Below are positions 4,119-39,390 of a stretch of DNA of 40,802 bases, in pieces. The notes beneath the pieces were generated by a model that was not told where the DNA came from, searched no databases, and worked only from the letters and a program-made list of their open reading frames with translations. The DNA comes from Octopus bimaculoides. Its lineage: Eukaryota. The first letter of the stretch is position 1. The number at the start of each line of letters is the position of its first letter. The translations under genes and the position numbers were made by a program. The stretch is from assembly GCF_001194135.2 (NCBI RefSeq), contig NC_068982.1, positions 81,964,728-82,005,529 of the forward strand, written 5' to 3'.

Positions 4119-4122
<4 letters not shown>

Positions 4123-4217
<95 letters not shown>
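4123..4217. repeat. (TAA)n microsatellite, first of a series (also 4813-4874, 5824-5909, 6520-6543, 6957-7038, 8640-8697, 9286-9337, 10362-10434)
   Basis: Directly visible. Confidence 0.97.
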
Positions 4218-4227
4218 NNNNNNNNNN

Positions 4228-4440
4228 TACTGTCTATGTGATCTCAAATTTTAAAACAAACATAATTTTCTTATGGTCTCTTAAACATTCTCTAGAACAA
4301 CACTATGTACAAATCCAAATATATGGTACCCTAGGCATAACACCTACATGAACTTCTAACTTGTCTCTTGAGGTCTCTGGATGAGACTTGGATCCAACTT
4401 GTACAAATGCAAAACAAAAGTCAAACATAAAATAATAATA
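4228..4440 (+). mobile_element. 3'-UTR-type fragment of an R4-like element or its SINE-like derivative (family X, copy 1), ending in an AAT tail
   Basis: Near-identical to 5677-5823; contains stem-loop AGGTCTC-TGGAT-GAGACTT; ends in aaaataataataat. Confidence 0.6.
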
Positions 4441-4811
4441 ATGAAATGATAAAATAATTAAATAAGTAACAAAAAAGTAAGTATACATGATATACAATTA
4501 AAAGGAAGGGAAATATACTTAGTATACAAAGATTAAAAAAAAAAGGAACGGTGATAGAGATGTAGTCCTCTTGATACAGGATGACCTCTAAGGGTAATCG
4601 AGGAACCCCACTGTCCGAGATCTCCCTGAACACCAAGAGTAAGTGCCTTCTCCAATTCCCTTTCCCCAACACACAGATCTACACTTAGGGAAGTACTATC
4701 CACTCTTGCCATATTTACGACTTTCACCTTTCAGTAAACTCACTCGAGGACAGCACTTCCTTCTCCACCCGCAATTTCTTTTTCAAGTGACACTTGAACA
4801 ACAACAACAAC

Positions 4812-4876
<65 letters not shown>

Positions 4877-4878
<2 letters not shown>

Positions 4879-5165
4879 TGTTCCTGTTAAAATAGTTGCC
4901 CTAGGTATGATAAAAATGGGATGTCAGAAACATCTAAATAACATCCCAGGAGAACCATGTCTCAGAGAAATCCAAAAGATTGTGCTGCTCGCATCTATAG
5001 AAAAACCTTATCAATTTAAATGTCTCTCTTGTATTTCATAAAAATATTTCGCTAAAGCCTCTGGAACTTCTCCACCCCAAGCTTTCGGTCATAATATAAC
5101 ATCTCTTATCCTTCACTCACCTTAGGACGCTGGGTGCGTCTCGGCAAGCGAAAGTGCTACATTGA
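4877..5165 (+). mobile_element. 3' end of an R4/Dong-like RLE retrotransposon (family Y)
   Basis: VPVKIVALGMIKMGCQKHLNNIPGEPCLREIQKIVLL matches the RLE C-terminus (VPVVIGALG...IQK..LLG); begins right after (TAA)n. Confidence 0.75.
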
Positions 5166-5167
5166 AA

Positions 5168-5676
5168 ACTGTGCGAAAAGTGGGGGCTAGAGAGATTTAA
5201 GACGTGCTAGTCGAAGACTAGCAAAATCCTCTGGGATTTCCCAATCCAAACAAATCAGGTGCTAGTACATAACAGACCGGACCTATTGGTGGATGCCAAG
5301 ATGCACCACATGTGTTATATAGTTGATGTTGCATGCCCCTTTGACCTACGAATAGCCAAGAAGGAAGACAAAAATAAATAAATAAATAAATACAACCCGC
5401 TTAAGTACGAAATAGCCCGGCTATTGAAAATGAAGGTGAAGATAGTACCAATTATTGCTGGATCTTTGGGAACCGTATCAGAAGGAATATAAAAGAAATT
5501 GGAACAGAGTGCTCAGTAGAAATGTTAGAAAAGGTTTGCCTCTTTGATACGGCCAGAATAATCAGGAAAATATTAAATAGCTGAAAAGAACGGATAGTAC
5601 AGTACAGTAGGCTGAAGGTAGCCTGCTACGCAAGCAGGACTCTAAGAGTTCCAACAAGACCTGTGATAAAAAGAAA
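5168..5676 (+). mobile_element. R4/Dong-like RLE domain fragment plus 3' UTR (family Z), frameshifted
   Basis: KILWDFPIQTNQVLVHNRPDLL...IVDVACPFDLRIAKKED...KYNPLKYEIARLLKMKVKIVPIIAGSLGTV...LFDTARIIRKILNS: PD-(D/E)xK restriction-like endonuclease motifs. Confidence 0.85.
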
Positions 5677-5823
5677 ACATTCACTTGAACAAAACTGTAC
5701 AAATCCAAATATATGGTACCCTAGGCATAACACCTACATGAACTTCTAACTTGTTGTCTCTTGAGGTCTCTGGGTGAGACTTGGATCCAACTTGTACAAA
5801 TGCAAAACAAAAGTCAAACATAA
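5677..5823 (+). mobile_element. Family X 3' fragment, copy 2
   Basis: Near-identical to 4283-4440; followed by an (AAT)n tract. Confidence 0.6.
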
Positions 5824-5910
<87 letters not shown>

Positions 5911-6520
5911 TGCGCTGATGCAGTGCCAGACAGTGGTTCTCATGGCTTCTGATCTTAACTGTTGGAAGTGTTATCATGTACATTGTTTTGTCTTGGTATA
6001 AAAGATGAGCTACAGCAAATATTCTGCTTAATACAACAGATTTGCTTGTCAATTGTTTGACCTTAACCAGTTGAGCATGTCCATTGGTGGCTGACGATAT
6101 GTGCATCTCTGATAACGAGCAGAAGTAGTGGGGGAGCATCATAGCCATGTGTTGAGAGGGATTCTTTGGGGTTTGANNNNNNNNNNAAGTAGTGGGGGAG
6201 CATCATAGCCATGTGTTGAGAGGGATTCTTTGGGGTTTGAATAATTCACCTTTGTAAACATGGGTGTTTTGCTCAACATCCTTAAACAAACCTTATTCAG
6301 GGACCTTTGGAACGGGATGGGCCACTCGACCTGAAGAAAATTCTAACTGGGTCCCACCTGCCAGGTCATGCGCTGTTTATCTTGATATGAGATCACCATG
6401 TCGCGCACATATGGTTGTGATGCATGTGCTTGGTGTACCCTTATCAGACGGGTAGTCATGATGGGTATAATGGGCTTCGTATATTTTACCTCAGTGTCAC
6501 TTTGATGACTCTCTAACTCA
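5911..6520 (+). mobile_element. Non-coding interspersed repeat (family W), about 600 bp, flanked by (TAA)n; strand inferred from the AAT tail
   Basis: Clearly alignable to 8700-9100 over ~400 bp; no coding motif recognised. Confidence 0.65.
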
Positions 6521-6543
6521 ATAATAATAATAATAATAATAAT

Positions 6544-6953
6544 GACAACGTTTCCCTAAAAGAAATGAAGAAACTTTCAAAATACAAAGACCTGGAAATA
6601 GAGGTAACTCGAATGTGGAATCTAAAAACAGAAACAATACCTAACATAATAGGCGCCTTATGTATAATAAAAAGATATTCAGACAAATGCATAACAAAAA
6701 CACTAGGACTTACAAATATATATAACATACAGAAAATTGCACTANNNNNNNNNNNNNNNNNNNNNNNNNNNNNNNNNNNNNNNNNNNNNNNNNNNNNNNN
6801 NNNNNNNNNNNNNNNNNNNNNNNNNNNNNNNNNNNNNNNNNNNNNNNNNNNNNNNNNNNNNNNNNNNNNNNNNNNNCAAACCACAGCACATACCCAAGGC
6901 ACACAGAGCCACGCTCGGTAGTGAAATGAAAGCACGTTATAAAAATAAAACTA

Positions 6954-6956
<3 letters not shown>
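6544..6956 (+). mobile_element. 3' end of an R4/Dong-like RLE element (family V), interrupted by a gap
   Basis: KKLSKYKDLEIEVTRMWNLKTETIPNIIGALCII...NIQKIAL matches the RLE EK..KY.DL..E....W....IP.IIGALG motif; (TAA)n on both sides. Confidence 0.85.
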
Positions 6957-7038
<82 letters not shown>

Positions 7039-7039
<1 letters not shown>

Positions 7040-8639
7040 CAAGGAAACTCTTGTTCACCTGTATTATTTGTTATAGCCTTGATCTCAATTTCTGTAGTCC
7101 TACGTAAAATCAACGTGCGCTATGAGATGAGAAAGAATGAACTTCGTCTCAACCACCTTCTCTTTATGGATGATTTAAAACTCTTCGCAAAAACAGAGCC
7201 TGAAATGGAAAGGCTGGTTGCGACTGAGGAAATGTGCAGCAAGGATATAGGGTTGGAATTCGTTATCTCGAAGTGTGCGGTGCATACTTTGAAGCGGGGG
7301 AAAAGAATAATTTGTAGGGGCATAGAATTGCCAAATAGAGAGAGAATGGAAGACCCAGATGATGATGGGTTCAAGTACCTTGGGATACTAGAGCTGGGTA
7401 CAGAGAAATGAAAGACAAGGTCATCACTGCATATTTCAAGTGCCCCAAACTTCTCTTGAAATCAAAACTCAATTCAAAGAACCTTGTGGCTGCCATCAAC
7501 ATATAGACTGCTGCTATAGTCCGCTATAGTGCACCCGTCCTGAGATAGACACAAGCGGAGATTGACCAGTTCGATCACACTATCCGAAAGACAATGACAA
7601 TCCATGGTGCCCTCCACCCTAAGGCAAATGTACACAAACTCTTCATGAAGTGAGGTAAGGGTGGACGTGGGCTGATTAGTGTGCATCAACAGTGAAAGAA
7701 GAAACATGGCAGAATATTTGGTAAATAGCAAACAAGACCTGCTACAGTATGCTGCTAGTGCAGAAGGAATTAACAAAAATGGACTTGAAAGTGCTCATGA
7801 ATTCCGAAGAAGAACAGCCAACGAAAAAGAACCCTACTCCGTATGGAATTACATGGGCAGTTCCACTATGAAACCAACAAATTAAAAGACCAGGAAGCAT
7901 CATGGAGGTGGCTCCAGAAGGATGACCTAAAAAAGAATACTGAAAGACTAATCATTGCAGCCTAGGACCAGGCATTGAATACCAACTCAGTGAAAAAGAA
8001 TATATACCCCATAAGTGAATCGGACCATTGCAGAATGTGCTTGTGAAAGTCTTGCGCAGAAAGAGTAGAAGCGTAGACACGAGAAAGTAACCCCAAACCT
8101 CTGCTGGCTACTATGCCGTAAGTATGGATATGAGGTTACGGGTCCATGGTATCAACATACACCGGAAAAGGTAATGGATGAAAAGAGGAAGGCAAAAAAT
8201 CCTCTGGGACTTTGATTTCCAGATAGACAAAGTGTTAGAGCACCGAAGGCTGGATATAGTAACTTTTAGGAGGGACAAACAAGAGTACCTAATAATCGAC
8301 GTAGCAGTGCCAGGAGACCAACTTATCATCATGAAAGAAAGAGAAAAATTTGATGAATATGGAGACCTGAGAATTGAGATCGTTAAGAAGTGGCAGCTAC
8401 GAGAGTCGAACATTTATCCCTATTGTCATCGGAGCATTGGATTCAATACCACCCAATCTGAAAAAAACATCTGAAAACCTTAGAGATACCCTACAATCTA
8501 GATGTATTGCAAAAGTCGGCATTACTTGGAACTGCATGCATATTGAGGCCCTTGTTGTGACTTGACAAACAGTACAAACCCCCGGTAGATACAATATCTT
8601 CAATCAACAACCTCATGATATTGTATACTGTGCGACGTC

Positions 8640-8640
<1 letters not shown>
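7039..8640 (+). mobile_element. 5'-truncated, decayed R4/Dong-clade non-LTR retrotransposon (RT C-half, zinc-knuckle remnant, RLE) inserted in (TAA)n
   Basis: LNHLLFMDDLKLFAK (RT catalytic FMDD, 7150-7190), FKYLGILE, GGRGL, HGQFH, HCRMC, KRRHEKV, KILWDF...RRLDIV...IIDVAVPGD...KEREKFDEYGDL...IPIVIGALD; several stops and frameshifts; TAA tracts at both ends. Confidence 0.93.
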
Positions 8641-8697
<57 letters not shown>

Positions 8698-8699
8698 TT

Positions 8700-9100
8700 T
8701 TGTTTGTCAGTAGCTTAGCTTTAACCAGTTGAGTATGTCCCTTAGTGGCTGACGATATGTGCATCTCTGATCATGAGCAGAAGTAGTGGGGGAGCATCAT
8801 AACCATGTATTGAGAGGAATTCTTTGGAGTTTGAATAATTCACCTTTGGAATCATGGGTGTTTTTTTACTATCTTTAAACAAGCTTTATTCAGCGACCCT
8901 TTGAGCGGGTTGGGCTACTGGATCTGAAGATAATTCTAACTGGGCCGCACCTGCAAGGTCATGTGCTGTGTGGCTTGATGTAAGATCCATACGTTGCGCA
9001 CATATGGTTGTGATGCATGTGTCTGGTGTACTCTTATCAGATGGATTATCATATTTGTACTCCAGTCTCACTTTGATGGCATACACTGCTCTTTCACTCA
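8700..9100 (+). mobile_element. Family W repeat, second copy
   Basis: Alignable to 6050-6520; between (TAA)n and an AAT/GAT tract. Confidence 0.65.
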
Positions 9101-9152
9101 ATAATAATAACAATAGTAATGATAATAATGATGATGATTACGATGATGATGA

Positions 9153-9277
9153 TTTCAAGTTTTGGCACAAAGCCATCAATTTCAGAGAGTGGGTAAGTCG
9201 ATTACCTCGATCCCAGTGCTCATCTAGTACTTATTTATCGACTCCGAAAGGATGAAGAGCAAAGCCAACCTCGGCGA
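9153..9277 (-). mobile_element. tRNA-derived SINE (family S1), 3' fragment
   Basis: Shares tggcacaa..cc...gtcgatt...actt atttatcga..ccgaaaggatgaa...cctcggcg with the other S1 copies. Confidence 0.75.
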
Positions 9278-9280
9278 ATA

Positions 9281-9337
<57 letters not shown>

Positions 9338-9339
<2 letters not shown>

Positions 9340-10359
9340 ATACGCTACAAATATACTTCTCGATCTTCTCTTTGAGTGCTGTGCTTATAACACCGAGGAC
9401 TTGGTTATGACGCCATGTATATCTGCCCACTGCCAGCCTGCAGTTTGACAGGACATGTCTCATCTTAGCTTTCCGCACTTATATTCCTCAGCCGTTTGTA
9501 TGTTCCACCGGACTTACTTGGCCGGTCACGGCAAAACGTCGAAGGTGGACTTGATCAGGAAGAATATTCTTGCTTGTTCCCAAGCCCAAAGTTCTTTCCG
9601 TGTGATTTTGCGACTGACCACATATTCCTCCCATCTTAGGCAGTGTCCTTGTTGACTGCACTACACCAAATGTACATTTCGTCTTTCTTTTTCCTCTTTG
9701 AGACCATTCCGTCCCAAGTCATTATAAATGGTATTATTTTAACCTTATATCCTTTCATCTGTTTAATTTCTCTAGCAAGTCTATTATACTTTTGTATTTT
9801 TGTCATTTCAACTTTTTTTGTGGTTGTTATTCCAATTTCCATTCTTATTGATTCTTTTCTTTCGTGGTCAAATATTGTAATATCGGGTTTATTGTTTGGT
9901 GCTATTACTGAGCTATCTACTAAAATCTTAACCATTTCACTTGTTACCTTTTCTATTTGCACATTTCTGATTTTCTGGATTTTGGGATGTTATATTTCTG
10001 TAGTAAGTTCGCAAAGATCATCTTGGTTATCTCATCGTGTCTCTCCTTATATTTCGTGTGTGCTATTTTTCCATATTGTATTGCCATATGTTCGATACTT
10101 CCATAGTAGTTGTTTCTGTCTTGTAAATACTGTATAATATTTTATTTAATCTCTCATTGAGTATTTGCTTTGTTTTATAAATTTCAATGAGTCTCTTTTT
10201 GATACTGCTTCCTCATTCAGGTGTTTGAAGTATTCACCGGGTATTTCTTTGTGTGATTGTTCCTTAATTATTATTTTCTCCCTCGTATTTTTTGTATTCA
10301 TTGTCATTATTGATATTATTTTTTATGCATTCTTTTTTATTTCCATAATATCGTAACCC

Positions 10360-10361
<2 letters not shown>
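9338..10361 (-). mobile_element. Divergent RLE-type non-LTR retrotransposon 3' fragment, opposite orientation within (TAA)n
   Basis: Minus translation: KERHDEITKMIF...NNKPDITIFDHERKESIRMEIGIT...KIQKYNRLAREI...KIIPFIMTWDGMV (PD..E..K..KY RLE motifs). Confidence 0.8.
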
Positions 10362-10435
<74 letters not shown>

Positions 10436-10444
10436 TTTACCTAT

Positions 10445-10538
10445 GGTGAAATTTACCATGGTGGAATATACCGTGGTGGAATTAACCTGGTGAAATTTTC
10501 CGTGATGGAATTTACCGCGGTGGAATTTACCGGTCACC
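10445..10538. repeat. Six tandem quasi-palindromic 15-bp units (GGTGGAATTTACCGT), ending in GGTCACC
   Basis: Units start at 10445, 10460, 10475 (14 bp), 10489, 10504, 10519. Confidence 0.9.
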
Positions 10539-11765: not shown

Positions 11766-12334
11766 AACAGGAAAGAATGACATGGGAGGAAAAGTAGAAA
11801 AGCAAGACAAACAGGGGAATAAAAGTAGATGCTATGGCGTCGGACTGAAAAAGACCCAACTGACCGAGTGAGTGGTCAGGCAGCAAAAAGGAGTGAAGAA
11901 ATGATATGGTCACGTGATACTTATATGGGAGGGAAAAGAGAGAACGAGCAATGAAGGGGAGAAATAAAGGCAGAGGAGACGGGAGAGCTGTACAAAGAGA
12001 AGAGAGAGTAGTGTTGGATAAATCGAAAGAGAGAGTTGAGAAGCTTGGTGCAGAACAGATACGAAGAAAGGAGGAGTGTGGAGAGAGAATGGAAAACTGA
12101 TTGACAAGAAATCGTTGACAGAGGTGAACAGAGGAAGAAATGAAAAGCTGCAGGTGTAGCTATAGGAGCAGGTGTGACTCTGTAAATAAGAAGCTTGCTT
12201 GCCAACCATTTGGTTCCGGGTTCAGTCCCACTGCGTAGCACCTTGGGCAAGTGTCTTCTACTATAGCCTCTGGCCGATCAAAGCCTTGTGAGTGGATTTG
12301 GTAGACGGAAACTGAAAGAAACCCGCCATGATAG

Positions 12335-12525
12335 ATCGCTAGCCACTACCCATTCTTTATTTTCTCTCCTTGTTTCTCCCTGTGTTCCTTTTTGTGGAAG
12401 AGCGTAGGCTTGAAACGTTAAAGACGTTTTCACATCCCGAGCGTTAAACTAATACATCTGCTTGTTGTCTACACCACCTGTCCACCTGTCTTCGTCTTTT
12501 GTTGTTTTTTTTGTGAATTCTCCCC
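12335..12525 (+). mobile_element. Penelope-like pseudo-LTR fragment carrying a decayed hammerhead
   Basis: Alignable to 23010-23155; contains GAGC-GTAG-GCTT-GAAACGT. Confidence 0.6.
12388..12423 (+). ncRNA. Decayed minimal type I hammerhead ribozyme
   Basis: Helix I CTTT/AAAG, core TTGTGGA (non-canonical), helix II GAGC/GCTT, GAAAC-GT-T, palindromic helix III ACGT. Confidence 0.55.
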
Positions 12526-13542: not shown

Positions 13543-14089
13543 TATGCATGCACCATGCACATGCAAATACACACACATATATATACGAGTGTCTGCATAT
13601 AGAGAAAGAGAATGAGAGGGTGGCAGAGAGAATAAGAGCGAAAAGGTGTGTGGAAAGAATGTAATAATGGGAGAAGGTGGTGGGTGTGCTTCATAAGAGA
13701 CATAAGAAGAAATAAAATAACGACAGGTTTGGGTGGAGTGTAAAATAAAGGTGAAAGGGCGAGAAAGGTAACATAAAAATGACAAATCTCTGATTAAAAA
13801 TTATGGCGTGTTTAGATGATGGTGGTGGCGGTAGCGGTGGTAATAGTAGTGATGGTGGTGGCACGGCGATGGCGACGGCGATTGTGACGCTGGCGGTGAT
13901 GGTGGGGGTGGCGGTGATGGTGTTGGCGGCGTCGGCAGCGGCGGTGGTGGTGGTTGTGACAATAATGGTGTTGTTGGTATTGGTTGTGCTGTCGTTTTTA
14001 AAGTTAGTCGTTGACTTTCCCGACCTTGCTGCTATCTCCACCTCCTCCGTTGTCGTTGTCGTTGTCGTCGTTGTTGCTATGATTATTAG

Positions 14090-22609: not shown

Positions 22610-22703
22610 ACATACTCTCTCTATGTCTCTCTGTCTCTCTCCCTGTCTCTCTCCCTGTCTCTCTCCCTGTCTCTCTGTCTCTCTCTCTGTCTCTCTCTCT
22701 GTT

Positions 22704-22734
<31 letters not shown>

Positions 22735-22865
22735 GTCTCTCTCTCTGTGTCTTTCTGTCTCTGTCTCTCTGTCTCTCTGTCTCTCTGGCTCTCTCTCTGT
22801 CTCTCTGTCTCTCTCTCTCTGTCACTCTGTTTCTCTGTCTCTGTCTGTCTCTCTGTCTCTCTCTC
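22610..22865. repeat. Pyrimidine-rich (CT)n/(CTGT)n compound microsatellite
   Basis: Directly visible. Confidence 0.9.
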
Positions 22866-23155: not shown

Positions 23156-23636
23156 ACTATATGTATATATATCTGTCTGTCTTTGGTGTATGTATGCACG
23201 CATGTCTATCCGTCTGTCTGTCTGTCTGTCTGTCTGTCAGTCTATTTGTATGTATGTATGGAAAATAATAGGGAAATGAAAAATAATAATAAGGCAGAAT
23301 GCTAAACTAAAAGCATATTTTAATATAGATTTCTAACCGGCTTTCATTGCATGGCAAATTTTCAAGACGAGGGAGAATGAAAATGTTTTTTACAAAAAAG
23401 TAAAAAATAATATATATAATATATATATACNNNNNNNNNNNNNNNNNNNNNNNNNNNNNNNNNNNNNNNNNNNNNNNNNNNNNNNNNNNNNNNNNNNNNN
23501 NNNNNNNNNNNNNNNNNNNNNNNNNNNNNNNNNNNNNNNNNNNNNNNNNNNNNNNNNNNNNNNNNNNNNNNNNNNNNNNNNNNNNNNNNNNNNNNNNNNN
23601 NTATATATATATATATATAAGCACACACACACACAG

Positions 23637-23667
<31 letters not shown>

Positions 23668-24033
23668 CATATATACATACATACATATGTATACACGCAC
23701 GCACATACATATTTATACATACCTATATCTATATATCTATACAGTGAGAAAAAAAAACGGCTGCGTTGTGTTCCAAATACCATTGGGAAAAGAGTCACAG
23801 ATAGACATTAAAGAAGTTACCGAGAAAAAAAGAAGCACACATGGAAGTGCACAAGTCCACTGATTCTTTCATTAGGTGTCAAGTAGAAAACATTACAATT
23901 TCGACACTTCGACAATAGTGTTCATTCCAGCAGTGATCGCAATATATTTGAGCTTTAACATCTGAAAATTGAACAAAGACAACAAAAATGAGTTTACAGG
24001 GTTCGTATTGGAAATATATAAAGTGAAACGAAC

Positions 24034-25650
24034 GGCTGTAGTAGGGACAAAGATTTTGGCAACCTGGGGCTATGTAGAAAAACAGGCATTGTTCAGCGCA
24101 TGGCTATGATAGAATTTGTTCAGGCAGGAACTAAAAGGAAATGTGGCTTTGTTCAGCGCAGGGTTTAAGTTCAGCCCAAACTTATAGAGAATGTGAGGCA
24201 TTGATCAATGAAAATCCATAGTAGAAGACAAGATTTGATGACTCAGACCTGTTGAACAAAATAACGATTTGAACAGCCACGCGCTACATTAGAAGACAAG
24301 GCTTTAGTAAGCATATGGCTGACAGGAAAGAAGTCTTCGGTCAGTCCTGGTCTCACAAGAGGCAAGTTTTGCGATCGGCTGATACTATGGTAAGAGGCAA
24401 GTTTTGATCAGGCCACGGCTTGCTAGGAGAAAGGAATTTGATCGGTTCGAGACTATAATGGAAAACAAGGTTTTGGTTAGACCAGAGCTCGCAGGAAACA
24501 AAGCTTTAAACACGCCCGTGCTGAAAGCAAGCGAAGTTTTGGTCACCTCGAGTTTAACAGGAAATTGACTAAGGTACAGTGTAAGTCTTTGGTCAAACAT
24601 GATAATTATTAAAGATATAACTTTGTTCACCTTGGATTTAAAAGTGCCAAATCATTGCTCTACCCAGCACCATAGTAGAAGACATTGGTTTGGTCAACGG
24701 GAGACTAATTTACAAGATCACGATTTCGTCGTTCTGGGGCTGTTAGAAAACAAGGTTTTGATCAACCTGAAGCTAACAGCAAACAAAACTTTAGCTAGCG
24801 AAGGACCAACGGGAAGCAAGGCTTTGGTAAGTCTACGGCTGTAGTAGAGACTAATGTTTGGTAAACCTGGGACTATATAAAAGGAAATGTTTTCTTTAAC
24901 TCGAAACAAAAGTAGAATTTATATATTCAGGCCAAAGAATAAAAGAAGAAAAGTCTTAGTCAACTCGGGGCAGACAGGCATAAAGTATTTTATGAGCCCG
25001 TCTTTGGTCAGTTCGTGGCTATAGTAGGGAAAAAAACTTTTGGCAGTCTCGGAATATGTAAGAGAAAAAACATTGAACAAACCCCCGGCTACTGTAGTAG
25101 ATAAGGCTTTGTTTAGGCTGTAGCTAAAGTAGTTGAAACAGATATGATCAATCCGGGGTTAACTAGAGAAAAACCTTTGCTCAACTCGGTGCTATAATTC
25201 AATACAAGACGGTGGTCAACCCATAGCTATATAGAACACAAAGCTTAGGTCAGCCGGAATTTATAGTAAAATACAAAGATTTTATGAATTAGAACTTATT
25301 AAAGCTATAATGGTTTTGACAGCCATGTGCTATATTAGAAAGTAAAGGTTTAGTAAGAGTGTGACTCACAGAAAACAAGACTTAGGCCAGGCCTGGTCTA
25401 GTAGGAGACAAGTTTTGGGGTCAATCGAGGTTACAATAATTCTTAAGGCTTTAGTCGGGACGGAGCTACGTAGAAAAGAAAGCCGAGGTTACTTTTTGAT
25501 CATCCCGAAGCTATAAAGACAAGGTCTTGGTCAGATCAGTGCTAACAGGAAACAAAGTTTTGAGCATTTCGGTGAGAAAAGAAAACAGTCAGCTCAGTTT
25601 TAACAGGAACAAAATCTCTATTCAGACTGGTGTTAAGTTACAAGACAACT
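24034..25650. repeat. Degenerate minisatellite, roughly 45-48 units of 33-35 bp (CAAGGCTTTGGTCAGCCCGGGGCTATAGTAGAAGA-like and CAAGGTTTTGGTCA..C.GAGCTAACAGGAAA-like)
   Basis: Recurrent CAAG/AxTTTGGTCA anchors; 33-bp spacing at 24466/24499/24532 and 24751/24784/24817. Confidence 0.85.
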
Positions 25651-26490
25651 GACAACAGAATGTCCTCCTATATATAGACATTTGTCCGGACCAGTGCCTT
25701 CTATATTAAATTACTAAAAAGGTTAGAAATTCTACAATAAAATTTTTTTTTAGACCTTGGTACATCATCAATCATGTTCCTAATCACTAATAACACAATG
25801 TCCTGTAAAATATTTTAATCTTGAAAATGTTTTTGTGTTTTTGTAAAATCTTCCAAAAATATCTGGTTTAGTTCATTTTTTTTTTTTTTTTTGCAAATCA
25901 GGTCTGTTAGTTCATACTGCCCTTAAGTGCTTATAGGCAAACGCCCCAGTTAAGCATCTCTGACCTTGAAGGACGGATATATCGGTTAATGTAGTCCGAG
26001 ATGGATGAGGCCTGAAAAAGAAAGACAGGAGTCTTAAGTCGTCTGCTCAGTCAGAGCTGAGGTAGTACAACATCAACAACAACAATAGCATCAGCAGCAG
26101 CAGCAACAATAGCAACGGCAGTACATCTATTTAATCACACGAACACCTTGTGTATATAAATACATACTATCAAGTATTTCCAGATTCACTCCCATACGTA
26201 TGTGGGTGTGTGCGTGCGTGCGCGCATGAGTTTACACGCGCGCGCGCGTCTAAATATATATGCATTCACACACACACANNNNNNNNNNTAAATATATATG
26301 CATTCACACACACACACATACACACACACACATACACACACACACATACACACATACACGCACATACACACACACACACATATATACTTACATACACATA
26401 ATCATGGTATGCGAATGTCTTGTGTGTATGTGCGCATATATGTGTGTGTATGTGAGTGTATATGTGTATGCGTGTGATTTTAAGTGTACA

Positions 26491-27189: not shown

Positions 27190-27758
27190 GTGGCGTTGGT
27201 GAGGTTGTAAAAAAAAAAAAGTGGTGGTGGCGGTGGTGGCGGTAGTGGTGATAGTGAGTGGTGGTGAGTGGTAGTGGTTAATGATGTGAGGGATAATATC
27301 GTATCTGGTGATGGTGTTAGTACTGTTGGTGGTGGTGGTTGATTTAGTGTAAGATGGTAGTGGAGTTGGGGTGGGTGGAAGTGGTGGTGGTGGTGGTAGT
27401 TGTGGTAGTGGCGATGAAAGTAATAGAAGGTAGTGGTAGGGATGGAGGTACTAATACTAGTAGTGGTGGTGGTGGTGGGAGTGGCAATGATCTAGCTTGA
27501 GTGATATAACGTCTGCCGATGATAGGCGCGTCGTGGTTGCGGCAGTAGTGGTGGTTTGTTGTATAAGGTGGTTGTAGCGGTGGTAGCGATAGACTCTGAT
27601 ACTGGATCTGCTGGTTGTGGTGGTGGTGTAACTCTCGGCTGGTTACGAGGTCACTGTAGCAGTGGCGGTAGTAGTCGTATTAATAGTAGAAATGGTAGTA
27701 GTACATGAGAGTAAGTATTGGTGGTAATTGCCCTCCGGTGCTTTTAGCCATACTATCG

Positions 27759-27809
<51 letters not shown>

Positions 27810-28035
27810 CGTGATGTGTAACCTTGTGGTGTTAATTTAGTGGTGGTGTGGGGTATAGTGATGGTGGTGGCGGTGGTGATTATAGTTTAGAATGGTAATA
27901 CGTTTGCTGATTGTGCTAGTATTGTGATAGTAGCGGTGGTGTTGGTGGTGTTGGTGGTGGTGGCGGTGGCGGTAGTGGAAGTTGTGGTGATTGTTAAAGG
28001 GATAGGAGGAGGAAGTTGTTAGTGGAAGGATGAGG
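27190..28035. repeat. (GGT)/(AGT)-rich low-complexity tract incl. pure (TAG)n at ~27760-27808
   Basis: Directly visible; similar tracts at 28500-28780 and 38580-39390. Confidence 0.85.
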
Positions 28036-28433: not shown

Positions 28434-28914
28434 GTATACATATACATACATACACATGTACATACATTCATACTATTGTATGTATATACTTATAAGTAAT
28501 GTATAGTGGTAGTAATCGTTATTATGTTAGTGGTCTGTGGCAATGGTGGTAGAGGTGGTGGTAATGATGGTGGTGATGGTGGTCATAGTAGTTAGTGGTG
28601 ATTGTGATCGTGTGGTCATGATTGTGGTAGCAGTGGCAGTGGCGGCGGGAGTCATGGTGGCGGTGATAGTAGTAGTATATGTGGAGGTAGTGATAGTGGC
28701 GGTGGCGGTAGTGGTAGTGGGGACGGTGGTGATGGTGATGATGATGGTGGTGGTGGTGGTGGCGATGGTAGTATTTGACAATTGTTTAGTATTTCTAACG
28801 GAAGCATCACTGGCGCAGGGAGATATGGGTAACGGCTTTTCTAGTGATGACAGAGATGATGGGCGGGGTAGTGGAGTTGACGGAGGTTGGCAGTAAAATG
28901 ACAGTCAAACTCCG

Positions 28915-29180
28915 GCACCACCACCACCACCAAAACCACCACCACCATCACCACCACCACCATCACCACCACCATCACCACTACCACCACCACNNNNNNN
29001 NNNNNNNNNNNNNNNNNNNNNNNNNNNNNNNNNNNNNNNNNNNNNNNNNNNNNNNNNNNNNNNNNNNNNNNNNNNNNNNNNNNNNNNNNNNNNNNNNNNN
29101 NNNNNNNNNNNNNNNNNNNNNNNNNNNNNACCACCAACACCACCACCACCACCACCACCACCAATACCATCTCCACCACC
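28915..29180. repeat. (CAC)n tract interrupted by a gap
   Basis: Directly visible. Confidence 0.9.
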
Positions 29181-29289
29181 ATATTTTACAAACTGTACAC
29201 ATGATGGAATTACCAATGCACTTCCAGTCTGGTTGCTTGGCAACATTGATGACTTGCTGCTTTCGATGATAAAATGTAAATATATTACA

Positions 29290-38691: not shown

Positions 38692-39390
38692 GTAATGATG
38701 GTGGTGGATGTAGTGGTAATGGTGATAGAGGTAGTGTTGGCGGCGGTATTTGCGGTGGTGGTCCTAGGGTTGTAAAGGAGCTGTTGTTGTTGTTGCTGTT
38801 GGTGGTAATAGTAGCATAGGAGGTGGTGGAAGAGTAGTGACGGTAAAAATGTCGGTACAGTGTTGCATTATGGAAGGAGGTGGCGGTGAAGAATTTGTAC
38901 TAATTATGGTGTAGTGTTGGTATACACTGGTGTTGTAGTATGGGCAGTAGTAATAGTGGTAGATGGATACTGTGGTGATGATAATGGTGTGGTGCAGTAA
39001 CAGTGTAGTGATGGGGTGTATGGTGGTCTAGTGTGGGTGTTGTAGTTGTAGTGTATATATGATGATGATGATGATGAGGATGGTGGTGATGGTGATATGG
39101 TGGTGGTGGTGATGTAGTGCTGTGATTCAAATGTTGAGACCAGATTCAGAGAAGGATTATCATGTAGTAACGATTGTTTTGACAGTGGTGGTTGTGGTAG
39201 TAGTTGTGGTGGAGGTGCGATGAATGTTATAAAGGAATGGAGAACTTGGAGTGGAGCAATGGTTGTGGACATTGTAATGGAGTTTGGGGCTATTGAGGTG
39301 GTAGTTGTAGTAGTGGTGGTGACGGTGGTGGTGGTGATGGTAGTAGTAGTAGTAGCAGTAGTAGTAGTAGTTGTTGTTGTTGTAATTGCT
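38580..39390. repeat. (GGT)/(GAT)/(GTA) low-complexity tract
   Basis: Directly visible. Confidence 0.85.

What the first reader, a model, noticed from the sequence alone, without database searches (positions are those of the whole stretch)
24034..25650. 1.6-kb minisatellite whose unit is the central domain of the local SINE
Seen: about 45-48 diverged units of 33 or 35 bp. The 35-bp unit matches the reverse complement of the SINE central segment at 12253-12289; unit 24817-24848 matches at 24 of 32 positions. The SINE segment starts with ACA and ends in GACAC on that strand, a microhomology that could seed tandemisation at the observed AGAAGAC|AAGG junction. A second 33-bp variant (...CTAACAGGAAA) occurs in runs. 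Inference: this conserved SINE domain was amplified alone into an old satellite, or the SINE acquired it from such a satellite. High unit divergence with retained TTTGGTCA and TAGTAGA anchors may indicate a clustered protein- or RNA-binding array.
Basis: partly seen in the sequence, partly recalled or inferred. Interest (0 to 1): 0.7.

Follow-up and report, generated by a model that had tools for sequence, protein, structure and literature searches.

The report
Old minisatellite from an octopus SINE
A 1.6-kb stretch is a real but old and heavily mutated tandem repeat whose 35-bp unit was copied from the middle of a common octopus SINE; it looks like neutral decaying DNA rather than a functional array, so it is an ordinary example of a known process.

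Summary
Window 24034-25645 carries about 47 head-to-tail units of 33-36 bp. They are about 66% identical to their consensus and 56% to each other. Tandem Repeats Finder misses the array, but autocorrelation, wrap-around alignment and profile scans all show it. A profile built from the units alone finds, as its best hit elsewhere in the 40.8-kb window, the 38-nt segment 12252-12289 of the single local SINE copy, in reverse orientation. A profile built from six SINE copies finds the array units in turn.

The SINE family occurs in Octopus vulgaris and O. bimaculoides. It carries a MIR/CORE-like motif just 5' of the copied segment.

The reading "SINE piece amplified into an old minisatellite" is supported. 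The reverse reading, that the SINE borrowed from a satellite, is unlikely.

The suggested binding-site array is not supported. The "anchors" are the A/T positions of the unit, which survive AT-biased decay (83% kept, against 60% at G/C positions).

The 33-bp variant does not occur in runs. Its spacing reflects one later duplication of a 346-bp block, 30 units downstream.

This is a new member of a known kind, of low to moderate interest.

The parts
24034..25645 (-). Decayed minisatellite of about 47 units of 33-36 bp. The + strand consensus is ACAAGGCTTTGGTCAGCCCGGGGCTATAGTAGAAG. The units lie antisense to the SINE, so the SINE-sense strand is minus.
   Evidence: Autocorrelation; wrap-around layout; unit profile; nhmmer with a SINE profile puts 15 of the 19 hits after the SINE copy itself here, all on the + strand and all at model positions 50-98.
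24218..24563 (.). Block A, about 10 units (roughly numbers 6-16): one copy of the internal segmental duplication.
   Evidence: blastn of the array against itself gives 72.9% over 155 bp, E 2e-19. Local alignment gives 247 matches, 78 mismatches and 43 gap columns, 76% identity. Unit distance 30 has mean identity 0.652, z 5.5, while distances 1-28 stay within about +/-2.
25263..25609 (.). Block A', the second copy of the duplicated block, about 1,045 bp (30 units) downstream of block A.
   Evidence: The 33-bp variant units 9, 14 and 16 reappear as units 39, 44 and 46.
12252..12289 (+). The SINE segment homologous to the unit: TGTCTTCTACTATAGCCTCTGGCCGATCAAAGCCTTGT. It is 38 nt, which is 35 nt plus the 3-nt TGT/ACA overlap.
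   Evidence: Best hit of the unit profile outside the array, with the score plateau over rotations 0-3. The consensus matches it at 31/35.
12147..12346 (+). The only copy of this tRNA-derived, CORE-like SINE family in the window.
   Evidence: nhmmer with a 6-copy profile: E 3.2e-56, aligned 12153-12342. blastn finds no second copy. Its antisense-frame peptide is 80-81% identical to Octopus vulgaris and O. bimaculoides proteins.
12240..12252 (+). The ACCTTGGGCAAGT motif, just 5' of the copied segment. It matches the hallmark of the MIR/CORE domain.
   Evidence: The literature places octopus OR1/OR2 among the CORE-SINEs.

Best explanation
This is a neutral, old minisatellite derived from a SINE fragment.

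A 35-bp internal piece of the body of an Octopus tRNA-derived SINE was duplicated head to tail. The piece lies just 3' of the SINE's CCTTGGGCAAGT, CORE-like motif. The SINE sequence carries ACA at both edges of the piece, so the junction reads GAAGAC|AAGG. The first duplication most likely arose by replication slippage or microhomology-mediated repair. The array then grew to tens of units by slippage or unequal exchange (inferred).

Turnover then stopped and the units decayed independently under the genome's AT-biased mutation. Pairwise identity is now 56% and shows no neighbour effect. Later, one block of at least 346 bp (10 units, possibly 17) was duplicated again 30 units downstream, and the two copies are now 76% identical.

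Using the published O. vulgaris calibration, the founding amplification would be roughly 90-125 My old and the block duplication roughly 40 My old. Both dates are rough.

Nothing indicates a present function.
For: The array and its period are real.

Homology to the SINE body holds in both directions. The unit profile finds 12252-12289 at 42.6 bits against a null maximum of 26.4. Profiles from SINE-blind seeds give the same hit. A profile of six SINE copies hits 15 array units and only at model positions 50-98.

The SINE is a widespread Octopus family. There are 46 protein hits, the best from O. vulgaris and O. bimaculoides, and diverged DNA copies occur in Logan contigs.

The array consensus translates to QGFGQPGAIVED. 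Both residues that differ from the commonest SINE peptide (GFGRPEAIVED) occur in other SINE copies, as GFGQP... and ...QPGAIV....

Decay is AT-biased and mostly explained by base identity.

Unit relationships are star-like except for one duplication at a 30-unit offset.

The consensus trimer is mildly hairpin-prone as single-stranded DNA (-17.8 kcal/mol, z -2.5), which is compatible with slippage.

Precedents: SINE-derived satellites in squamates, PcH-Sat derived from a Nin-SINE in limpets, and tandem SINE structures in bivalves.
Against: No SINE head or tail adjoins the array. The head should have been detectable (expected score about 39, observed 20, null 20 +/- 3). So the seeding SINE copy cannot be shown, unlike most squamate sSats.

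The residual heterogeneity among columns (chi2 58, 31 df, p 0.002) is not fully explained. Part of it comes from the 33-bp variant and from pseudo-replication caused by the duplicated block.

Copy number in the genome, presence in other species, and transcription were not testable here.
Confidence: 0.8

Rival explanations
1. The array is one member of a multi-copy family. It would be either the VNTR-like internal region of a larger composite mobile element, or one of many SINE-derived satellite loci spread through the octopus genome, rather than a one-off local event.
For: In squamates, SINE-derived satellites occur at tens to thousands of loci per genome. SINEs make up about 11.6% of the O. 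vulgaris genome, so there are many opportunities. The 33-bp subtype shows that the array had some turnover before it froze.
Against: No other unit or array exists in the remaining 39 kb of the window. The flanks 23742-24040 and 25640-26278 match nothing else in the window apart from low-complexity runs. Neither flank has a SINE terminus, a terminal inverted repeat or a tail. The only homopolymer run nearby, T17 at 25876-25892, lies on the wrong side for a 3' tail of an element that carries the units in SINE-sense orientation.
Confidence: 0.2
2. The array is a functional cluster of degenerate binding sites for a protein or RNA, maintained at the TTTGGTCA and TAGTAGA anchors.
For: Columns differ strongly in conservation under a uniform model (chi2 154, p 3e-17). 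A small excess remains after correcting for base identity (p 0.002); C14 and C24 are kept somewhat more often than other C positions (z about 2.1-2.3). The array has survived a long time.
Against: The anchors are simply the A/T positions: 83% kept against 60% at G/C positions, and 63% of changes are GC-to-AT. The G positions inside TTTGGTCA are kept at 67% and 52%, like other G positions. Only 4 of 47 units keep an intact TTTGGTCA, and only 4 keep an intact TAGTAGA. Unit lengths drift from 26 to 47 bp, so there is no phasing. There is no homogenisation.
Confidence: 0.05
3. The direction is reversed: a pre-existing 35-bp satellite supplied the SINE's central segment.
For: The SINE holds just over one unit (38 nt). 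On its own this is symmetric with respect to direction.
Against: The segment is flanked in the SINE by a MIR/CORE-like motif, and its first 13 nt (TACTATAGCCTCT) align with MIR TACTTAACCTCT (the MIR sequence is from memory). Octopus CORE-SINEs are documented in the literature. The segment is present in all SINE copies examined, including copies only 73-78% identical to the local one. Published cases run from transposable element to satellite.
Confidence: 0.04
4. The resemblance between the array unit and the SINE is chance or an assembly artefact.
For: TRF does not call the array. The scaffold is a draft with 16 runs of N.
Against: The profile hit lies about 10 sd above the null mean (42.6 against 15.0 +/- 2.8; largest of 60 shuffles 26.4). 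It is reproduced from SINE-blind seeds. It is also reproduced from an independent SINE profile. There is no N inside 23602-26278. Units only 56% alike cannot result from a collapsed or duplicated assembly.
Confidence: 0.01

Closest known systems
SINE-derived satellites (sSats) of squamate reptiles (Vassetzky et al. 2023, PMC10702118)
   Same: Tandem repeats whose unit is a portion of a tRNA-related SINE, for example 67 nt of Squam3 covering box B and part of the body. They arise independently in different lineages. Locus-specific unit subvariants occur.
   Different: The unit here is shorter (35 bp) and purely internal. No longer terminal unit runs into a SINE terminus. The units are far more diverged: 56% pairwise, against 82-94% in cobra loci. 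There is no homogenisation. The host is a cephalopod. The number of loci is unknown.
PcH-Sat of the limpet Patella caerulea, derived from a Nin-SINE (PMC11121367)
   Same: A mollusc tandem repeat that contains a segment of a SINE with a conserved central domain.
   Different: PcH-Sat is a 179-bp, highly homogeneous (91.6-99.8%) pericentromeric satellite making up as much as 10% of the genome. The array here is a single 1.6-kb decayed array of 35-bp units.
Tandem-like SINE structures in bivalves (PMC11481361)
   Same: SINEs with highly conserved domains, in molluscs, forming direct tandem arrays. Unequal recombination or microhomology-mediated repair is discussed as the cause.
   Different: There the repeating unit is a whole or 3'-truncated SINE of at least 150 bp, with target-site duplications, in 2-15 copies. 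Here only a 35-bp sub-fragment repeats, about 47 times.
CORE-SINE superfamily (MIR; octopus OR1/OR2)
   Same: The source SINE has a B-box-like GGTTCAGTCCC followed by ACCTTGGGCAAGT, as in MIR. The literature lists an octopus SINE among the CORE-SINEs.
   Different: The array unit leaves out the hallmark motif and covers only the part 3' of it.

Membership tests
Minisatellite (tandem array of 10-100 bp units) | Head-to-tail repetition of a unit with significant periodicity | tested here: met
   Lags 33, 34 and 35 give z 7.7, 7.4 and 5.6, with harmonics. The layout shows 47 contiguous units.
SINE-derived satellite (sSat sensu Vassetzky et al. 2023) | The repeat unit is homologous to a portion of a SINE present in the same genome | tested here: met
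   The unit profile hits SINE segment 12252-12289 at 42.6 bits against a null maximum of 26.4. SINE-blind seeds give the same hit. A SINE profile hits 15 units.
SINE-derived satellite (sSat sensu Vassetzky et al. 2023) | A longer terminal unit that continues into the SINE up to its terminus (seen in most but not all sSats) | tested here: not met
   Right flank against the SINE head: score 20 against a null of 20.1 +/- 3.2. Left flank against the 3' part: score 16 against 15.1 +/- 2.2. nhmmer finds no hit outside model positions 50-98 in the flanks. The 56-nt 3' part would be hard to detect at this level of decay.
SINE-derived satellite (sSat sensu Vassetzky et al. 2023) | Several loci per genome, with homogenisation of long loci | tested here: inconclusive
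   Homogenisation is absent within this locus (56% pairwise, no neighbour effect).
CORE-SINE superfamily (for the source SINE) | A CORE domain of about 65 bp, homologous to that of MIR, downstream of a tRNA-related head | tested here: inconclusive
The literature lists an octopus CORE-SINE. No curated consensus was available.
CORE-SINE superfamily (for the source SINE) | A tRNA-derived head with A and B boxes | tested here: inconclusive
   ARAGORN and Rfam report no tRNA in the copy. A B-box-like GGTTCAGTCCC can be read directly in the sequence at about 12208-12229.
Functional array of binding sites | Conservation at particular positions beyond what mutation bias explains, with sites kept in phase | tested here: not met
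   Base identity explains most of the heterogeneity (chi2 falls from 154 to 58). The anchors are intact in only 4 of 47 units each. Unit lengths range from 26 to 47 bp.

The most novel reading that the evidence does not exclude
Octopus genomes may hold a so far undescribed family of minisatellites built from the 3' half of the CORE-like domain of their major SINE. This locus would be an ancient member, retained across Octopodidae because the clustered domain copies still recruit whatever factor binds the SINE's conserved domain. The array would then be a natural multimerised probe for the unknown function of SINE central domains.
Probability: 0.05. Interest if true: 0.6.

Novelty: new member of a known kind. 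Interest (0 to 1): 0.25.

Why it matters
The finding adds a cephalopod case to the small set of documented SINE-to-tandem-repeat conversions, which so far cover squamates, a limpet and bivalves. Here only a 35-bp internal sub-fragment of the conserved body was amplified.

It shows that arrays this old are invisible to standard TRF-based annotation. Part of the "unknown repeat" or "unique" fraction of octopus genomes may therefore be decayed tandem DNA.

It is also a caution. Conserved-looking "anchors" in a decayed repeat can result from AT-biased mutation and need not reflect binding sites.

There is no indication of a new mechanism or function.

Tried and rejected
- TRF at minimum score 30 gave no call for the array.
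- The repeat finder on the whole window was swamped by microsatellites and runs of N.
- Rfam (gathering threshold on the window; E-value threshold on the SINE) and ARAGORN found nothing relevant.
No reads could be laid, and read laying was not used.
- The look-up of encoding contigs for two window ORFs found nothing on record.
- The search for homologous proteins with the local SINE peptide found no candidate.
- The search for homologous proteins with the RT ORF 7079-7411 gave a best identity of 57% and no cephalopod name. Its best locus, L038 (GCA_949826985.1), has no SINE and no nucleotide similarity to the window.
- Scans of metagenome and viral contigs for GGCTATAGTAGAAGACA gave 32 and 5 loci. 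All are chance 17-mer matches with no extension.
- A full-text search for six strings from the SINE sequence found no papers.
- One literature search timed out.
- PMC15861 (Gilbert & Labuda 1999) and PMC4795812 (Albertin et al. 2015) are not held.
- Higher-order periodicity: the lag-454 autocorrelation peak is only in-phase unit identity. Only the 30-unit offset is real.
- A periodicity control on other 1.6-kb windows was confounded by dinucleotide microsatellites and is not used.
- A search for arrays with a consensus-translated query was considered and dropped. The consensus has stop codons every 105 bp on both strands, so a negative result would mean nothing.

Full report
**Observation.** The sequence from 24034 to about 25645 is a genuine, highly diverged tandem array. 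TRF, even at minimum score 30, reports nothing with a 33-35 bp period there. This fits its stated blindness to arrays less than about 70% alike. The autocorrelation of the region peaks at lags 33, 34 and 35 (match 0.356, 0.341, 0.324; z 7.7, 7.4, 5.6 against 200 shuffles), with harmonics at 68 and 101. Wrap-around dynamic programming started from five raw 34-mers of the region converges on the same cyclic consensus. The final layout has 47 units between 24047 and 25645, preceded by a partial unit. Lengths are mostly 33-36 bp. Mean identity to the consensus ACAAGGCTTTGGTCAGCCCGGGGCTATAGTAGAAG is 66%, and mean pairwise identity is 56%. No run of N lies inside 23602-26278, and units this different cannot come from an assembly collapse.

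**Link to the SINE.** I built a position weight matrix from the units and scanned it over the rest of the window, on both strands and in all 35 rotations. Its best hit is 12252-12289 on the minus strand, at 42.6 bits. Sixty block-shuffled windows gave maxima of 15.0 +/- 2.8 (largest 26.4). My first consensus had been guessed by eye, so I repeated the test with matrices seeded from three raw units. The same site is the top hit each time, at 30.9-39.0 bits against null maxima of at most 24.1. The score is flat over rotations 0-3 and falls outside them.

The reverse test gives the same answer. A profile HMM of six SINE copies (the window's copy and five from public contigs) finds the window's copy at E 3e-56. 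Fifteen of its next nineteen hits lie inside the array. All fifteen are on the + strand and all fall at model positions 50-98.

**What the SINE is.** Only one copy lies in the window, at about 12147-12346 on the + strand. Its antisense reading frame is open for 61 codons. A full HMMER scan of 1.84 billion representative proteins found 46 proteins carrying the same peptide. The best, at 80-81% identity, are Octopus vulgaris proteins CAI9725719.1 and CAI9739595.1. Others are O. bimaculoides XP_014769661.2 and A0A0L8G9M0. The family is therefore an Octopus SINE, and the window is very probably from an Octopus genome.

Logan contigs from runs SRR118693xx carry DNA copies 73-78% identical to the local one, so the family is old and diverse.

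Immediately 5' of the segment copied into the array, the SINE reads ACCTTGGGCAAGT, preceded by a B-box-like GGTTCAGTCCC. The literature places an octopus SINE (OR1 or OR2) in the CORE-SINE superfamily. I treat membership of that superfamily as likely but not proven. On this reading the array unit is the part of the conserved body just 3' of the hallmark motif, not the whole domain.

**Direction of derivation.** The copied segment is embedded in a longer conserved SINE body. It is present in every SINE copy examined, including very diverged ones. The array consensus translates, in the SINE's open antisense frame, to QGFGQPGAIVED. The commonest SINE peptide is GFGRPEAIVED, but both differing residues occur in other SINE copies, as GFGQP... 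and ...QPGAIV.... The array consensus therefore lies within the family's variation. The array's boundaries are an arbitrary ACA...ACA pair inside the domain. Together with the published precedents, in which the SINE is the source, this favours SINE to array. A capture by the SINE from a satellite is not excluded, but I give it about 4%.

**Flanks.** Unlike most squamate SINE-derived satellites, which keep a longer terminal unit running into the SINE terminus, this array has no detectable SINE head on its right flank and no 3' part on its left. The local alignment scores equal the shuffle means, and the SINE profile finds nothing outside positions 50-98. At the array's level of decay the 122-nt head should still have scored about 39 against a null of 20, so its absence is meaningful. 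The 56-nt 3' part would be undetectable. The flanks are unique within the window.

**Internal history.** Unit-to-unit identity does not depend on distance for offsets of 1 to 28 units (z within about +/-2). There was therefore no local homogenisation and there is no short higher-order repeat. The autocorrelation peak at lag 454 is only in-phase unit identity. At an offset of 30 units, however, mean identity rises to 0.652 (z 5.5). blastn aligns 24218-24371 with 25263-25417 at E 2e-19. The full local alignment joins 24218-24563 to 25263-25609 with 247 matches, 78 mismatches and 43 gap columns, which is 76% identity. Non-overlapping control offsets score 49 against 114.

It occurs in units 9, 14, 16 and 22 and again in units 39, 44 and 46, which is 9, 14 and 16 plus 30. 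The variant shares a 2-bp deletion and several substitutions, so the array had at least two unit types before it froze.

**Age.** Jukes-Cantor distances are 0.33-0.45 per lineage for the founding amplification and 0.145 per lineage for the block duplication. With the O. vulgaris calibration (JC 0.09 is about 25 My; 0.2 is about 56 My; PMC13282606), these correspond to roughly 90-125 My and 40 My. The figures are rough. Alignment of short diverged units inflates identity, and the rate may not apply to this locus.

**Function.** Columns do differ greatly under a uniform model (chi2 154, 34 df, p 3e-17). But consensus A and T positions are kept in 85% and 81% of cells, and C and G positions in 62% and 59%. 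GC-to-AT changes are 287 of 454 substitutions. The array has drifted from 54% G+C in its consensus to 40%, close to the window's 37.5%. With a separate retention rate for each base, chi2 falls to 58 (31 df, p 0.002). The largest residuals are the columns affected by the 33-bp variant. The two G positions inside TTTGGTCA behave like any other G. Only four units keep each anchor intact, and unit length wanders from 26 to 47 bp. I conclude that the anchors are the mutationally stable A/T positions of the unit and that there is no evidence of constraint.

**Mechanism.** Shown: the unit, its source segment, the ACA overlap, the star-like decay, and the later block duplication. Inferred: the first duplication arose by slippage or microhomology-mediated repair between the two ACA triplets. 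A 3-nt repeat is weak evidence, since such repeats are common by chance. Also inferred: expansion by slippage or unequal exchange. A trimer of the consensus folds moderately better than shuffles as single-stranded DNA (-17.8 kcal/mol, z -2.5). The folding comes from its near-palindromic AGCCCGGGGCT core and would favour slippage, but this is only suggestive.

**Comparison and novelty.** Tandem repeats derived from parts of SINEs are documented in squamates: 67-nt and other units, up to thousands of loci, 82-94% unit similarity. A limpet satellite contains 118 bp of a Nin-SINE. Whole-SINE tandem structures are described in bivalves. I found no report for cephalopods in the searchable library. 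That is absence of evidence in a limited corpus.

The present array differs from these cases in five ways. Its unit is short and purely internal. SINE termini are absent. It is very old. It shows no homogenisation. So far it is known from a single locus. It is a new member of a known kind. It is not a member of the squamate sSat class in the strict sense, because the terminal-unit feature was tested and not met and the multi-locus feature is untested.

**Limits.** No octopus genomic DNA other than the window and a few 1-1.8 kb Logan contigs could be reached. Paralogous arrays, orthologous loci and copy number therefore remain open. They are the decisive next checks.

Noticed in passing
window 7079-9962 (ORFs 7079-7411 +, 8178-8474 +, 9636-9962 -): Fragments of a reverse-transcriptase (LINE-like) element. 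The 110-aa ORF has 597 homologues carrying PF00078, but the best is only 57% identical, so this is an old, decayed copy. The best-matching locus, L038 (GCA_949826985.1), shares no nucleotide similarity with the window.
   Followed up: partly
protein P0135 (ENA contig of 28,379 bp; not in the window): A 1,017-aa predicted ORF made of about 16 tandem units of about 61 aa. Each unit contains ...LTHEPNGWSSLFSLSL..., which matches the head (B-box region) peptide of this SINE (11 matched stretches, E 4.5e-8). It may be a satellite derived from a tRNA or a SINE head in another organism. Its source organism is unknown.
   Followed up: partly
proteins P0123 (O. bimaculoides XP_014769661.2), P0128 (O. 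bimaculoides A0A0L8G9M0, UBC core domain protein), P0121, P0122 and P0125 (O. vulgaris): Annotated Octopus proteins contain the antisense translation of this SINE, often preceded by (IY)n translated from a TA microsatellite. This suggests either exonised SINE copies or gene-model artefacts.
   Followed up: no
window 1648-37416 (16 runs of N, 4,112 N in total): The window is a draft scaffold with many gaps, most of them next to microsatellites. None lies inside the array; the nearest are 23431-23601 and 26279-26288.
   Followed up: yes
window 13816-14076, 27215-28011, 28514-28777, 39257-39388 (complement-type runs at 28916-29181): Recurrent degenerate G/T-rich arrays based on trinucleotides (GGT/GTG/GTA, with 9-39 bp higher periods). 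They resemble one another and may form a dispersed family of cryptic simple repeats.
   Followed up: no
window 10444-10532: A short tandem repeat of a 15-bp unit, TGGTGGAATTTACCG, in 6 copies (also scored as two copies of 44 bp), directly after an (ATA)n run.
   Followed up: no
window 22615-22865: A 250-bp (CTCTCTGT)n-like array with a 44-bp higher-order period (TRF score 303), next to a 430-bp gap.
   Followed up: no
window 4122-10435: Eight (AAT/ATA)n microsatellites of 24-96 bp within 6.3 kb. Their flanks share no sequence, so they are not tails of one retroposon family.
   Followed up: yes
window 25876-25892: A T17 run about 230 bp to the right of the array. It lies on the wrong side to be the poly(A) tail of an element carrying the units in SINE-sense orientation.
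   Followed up: partly
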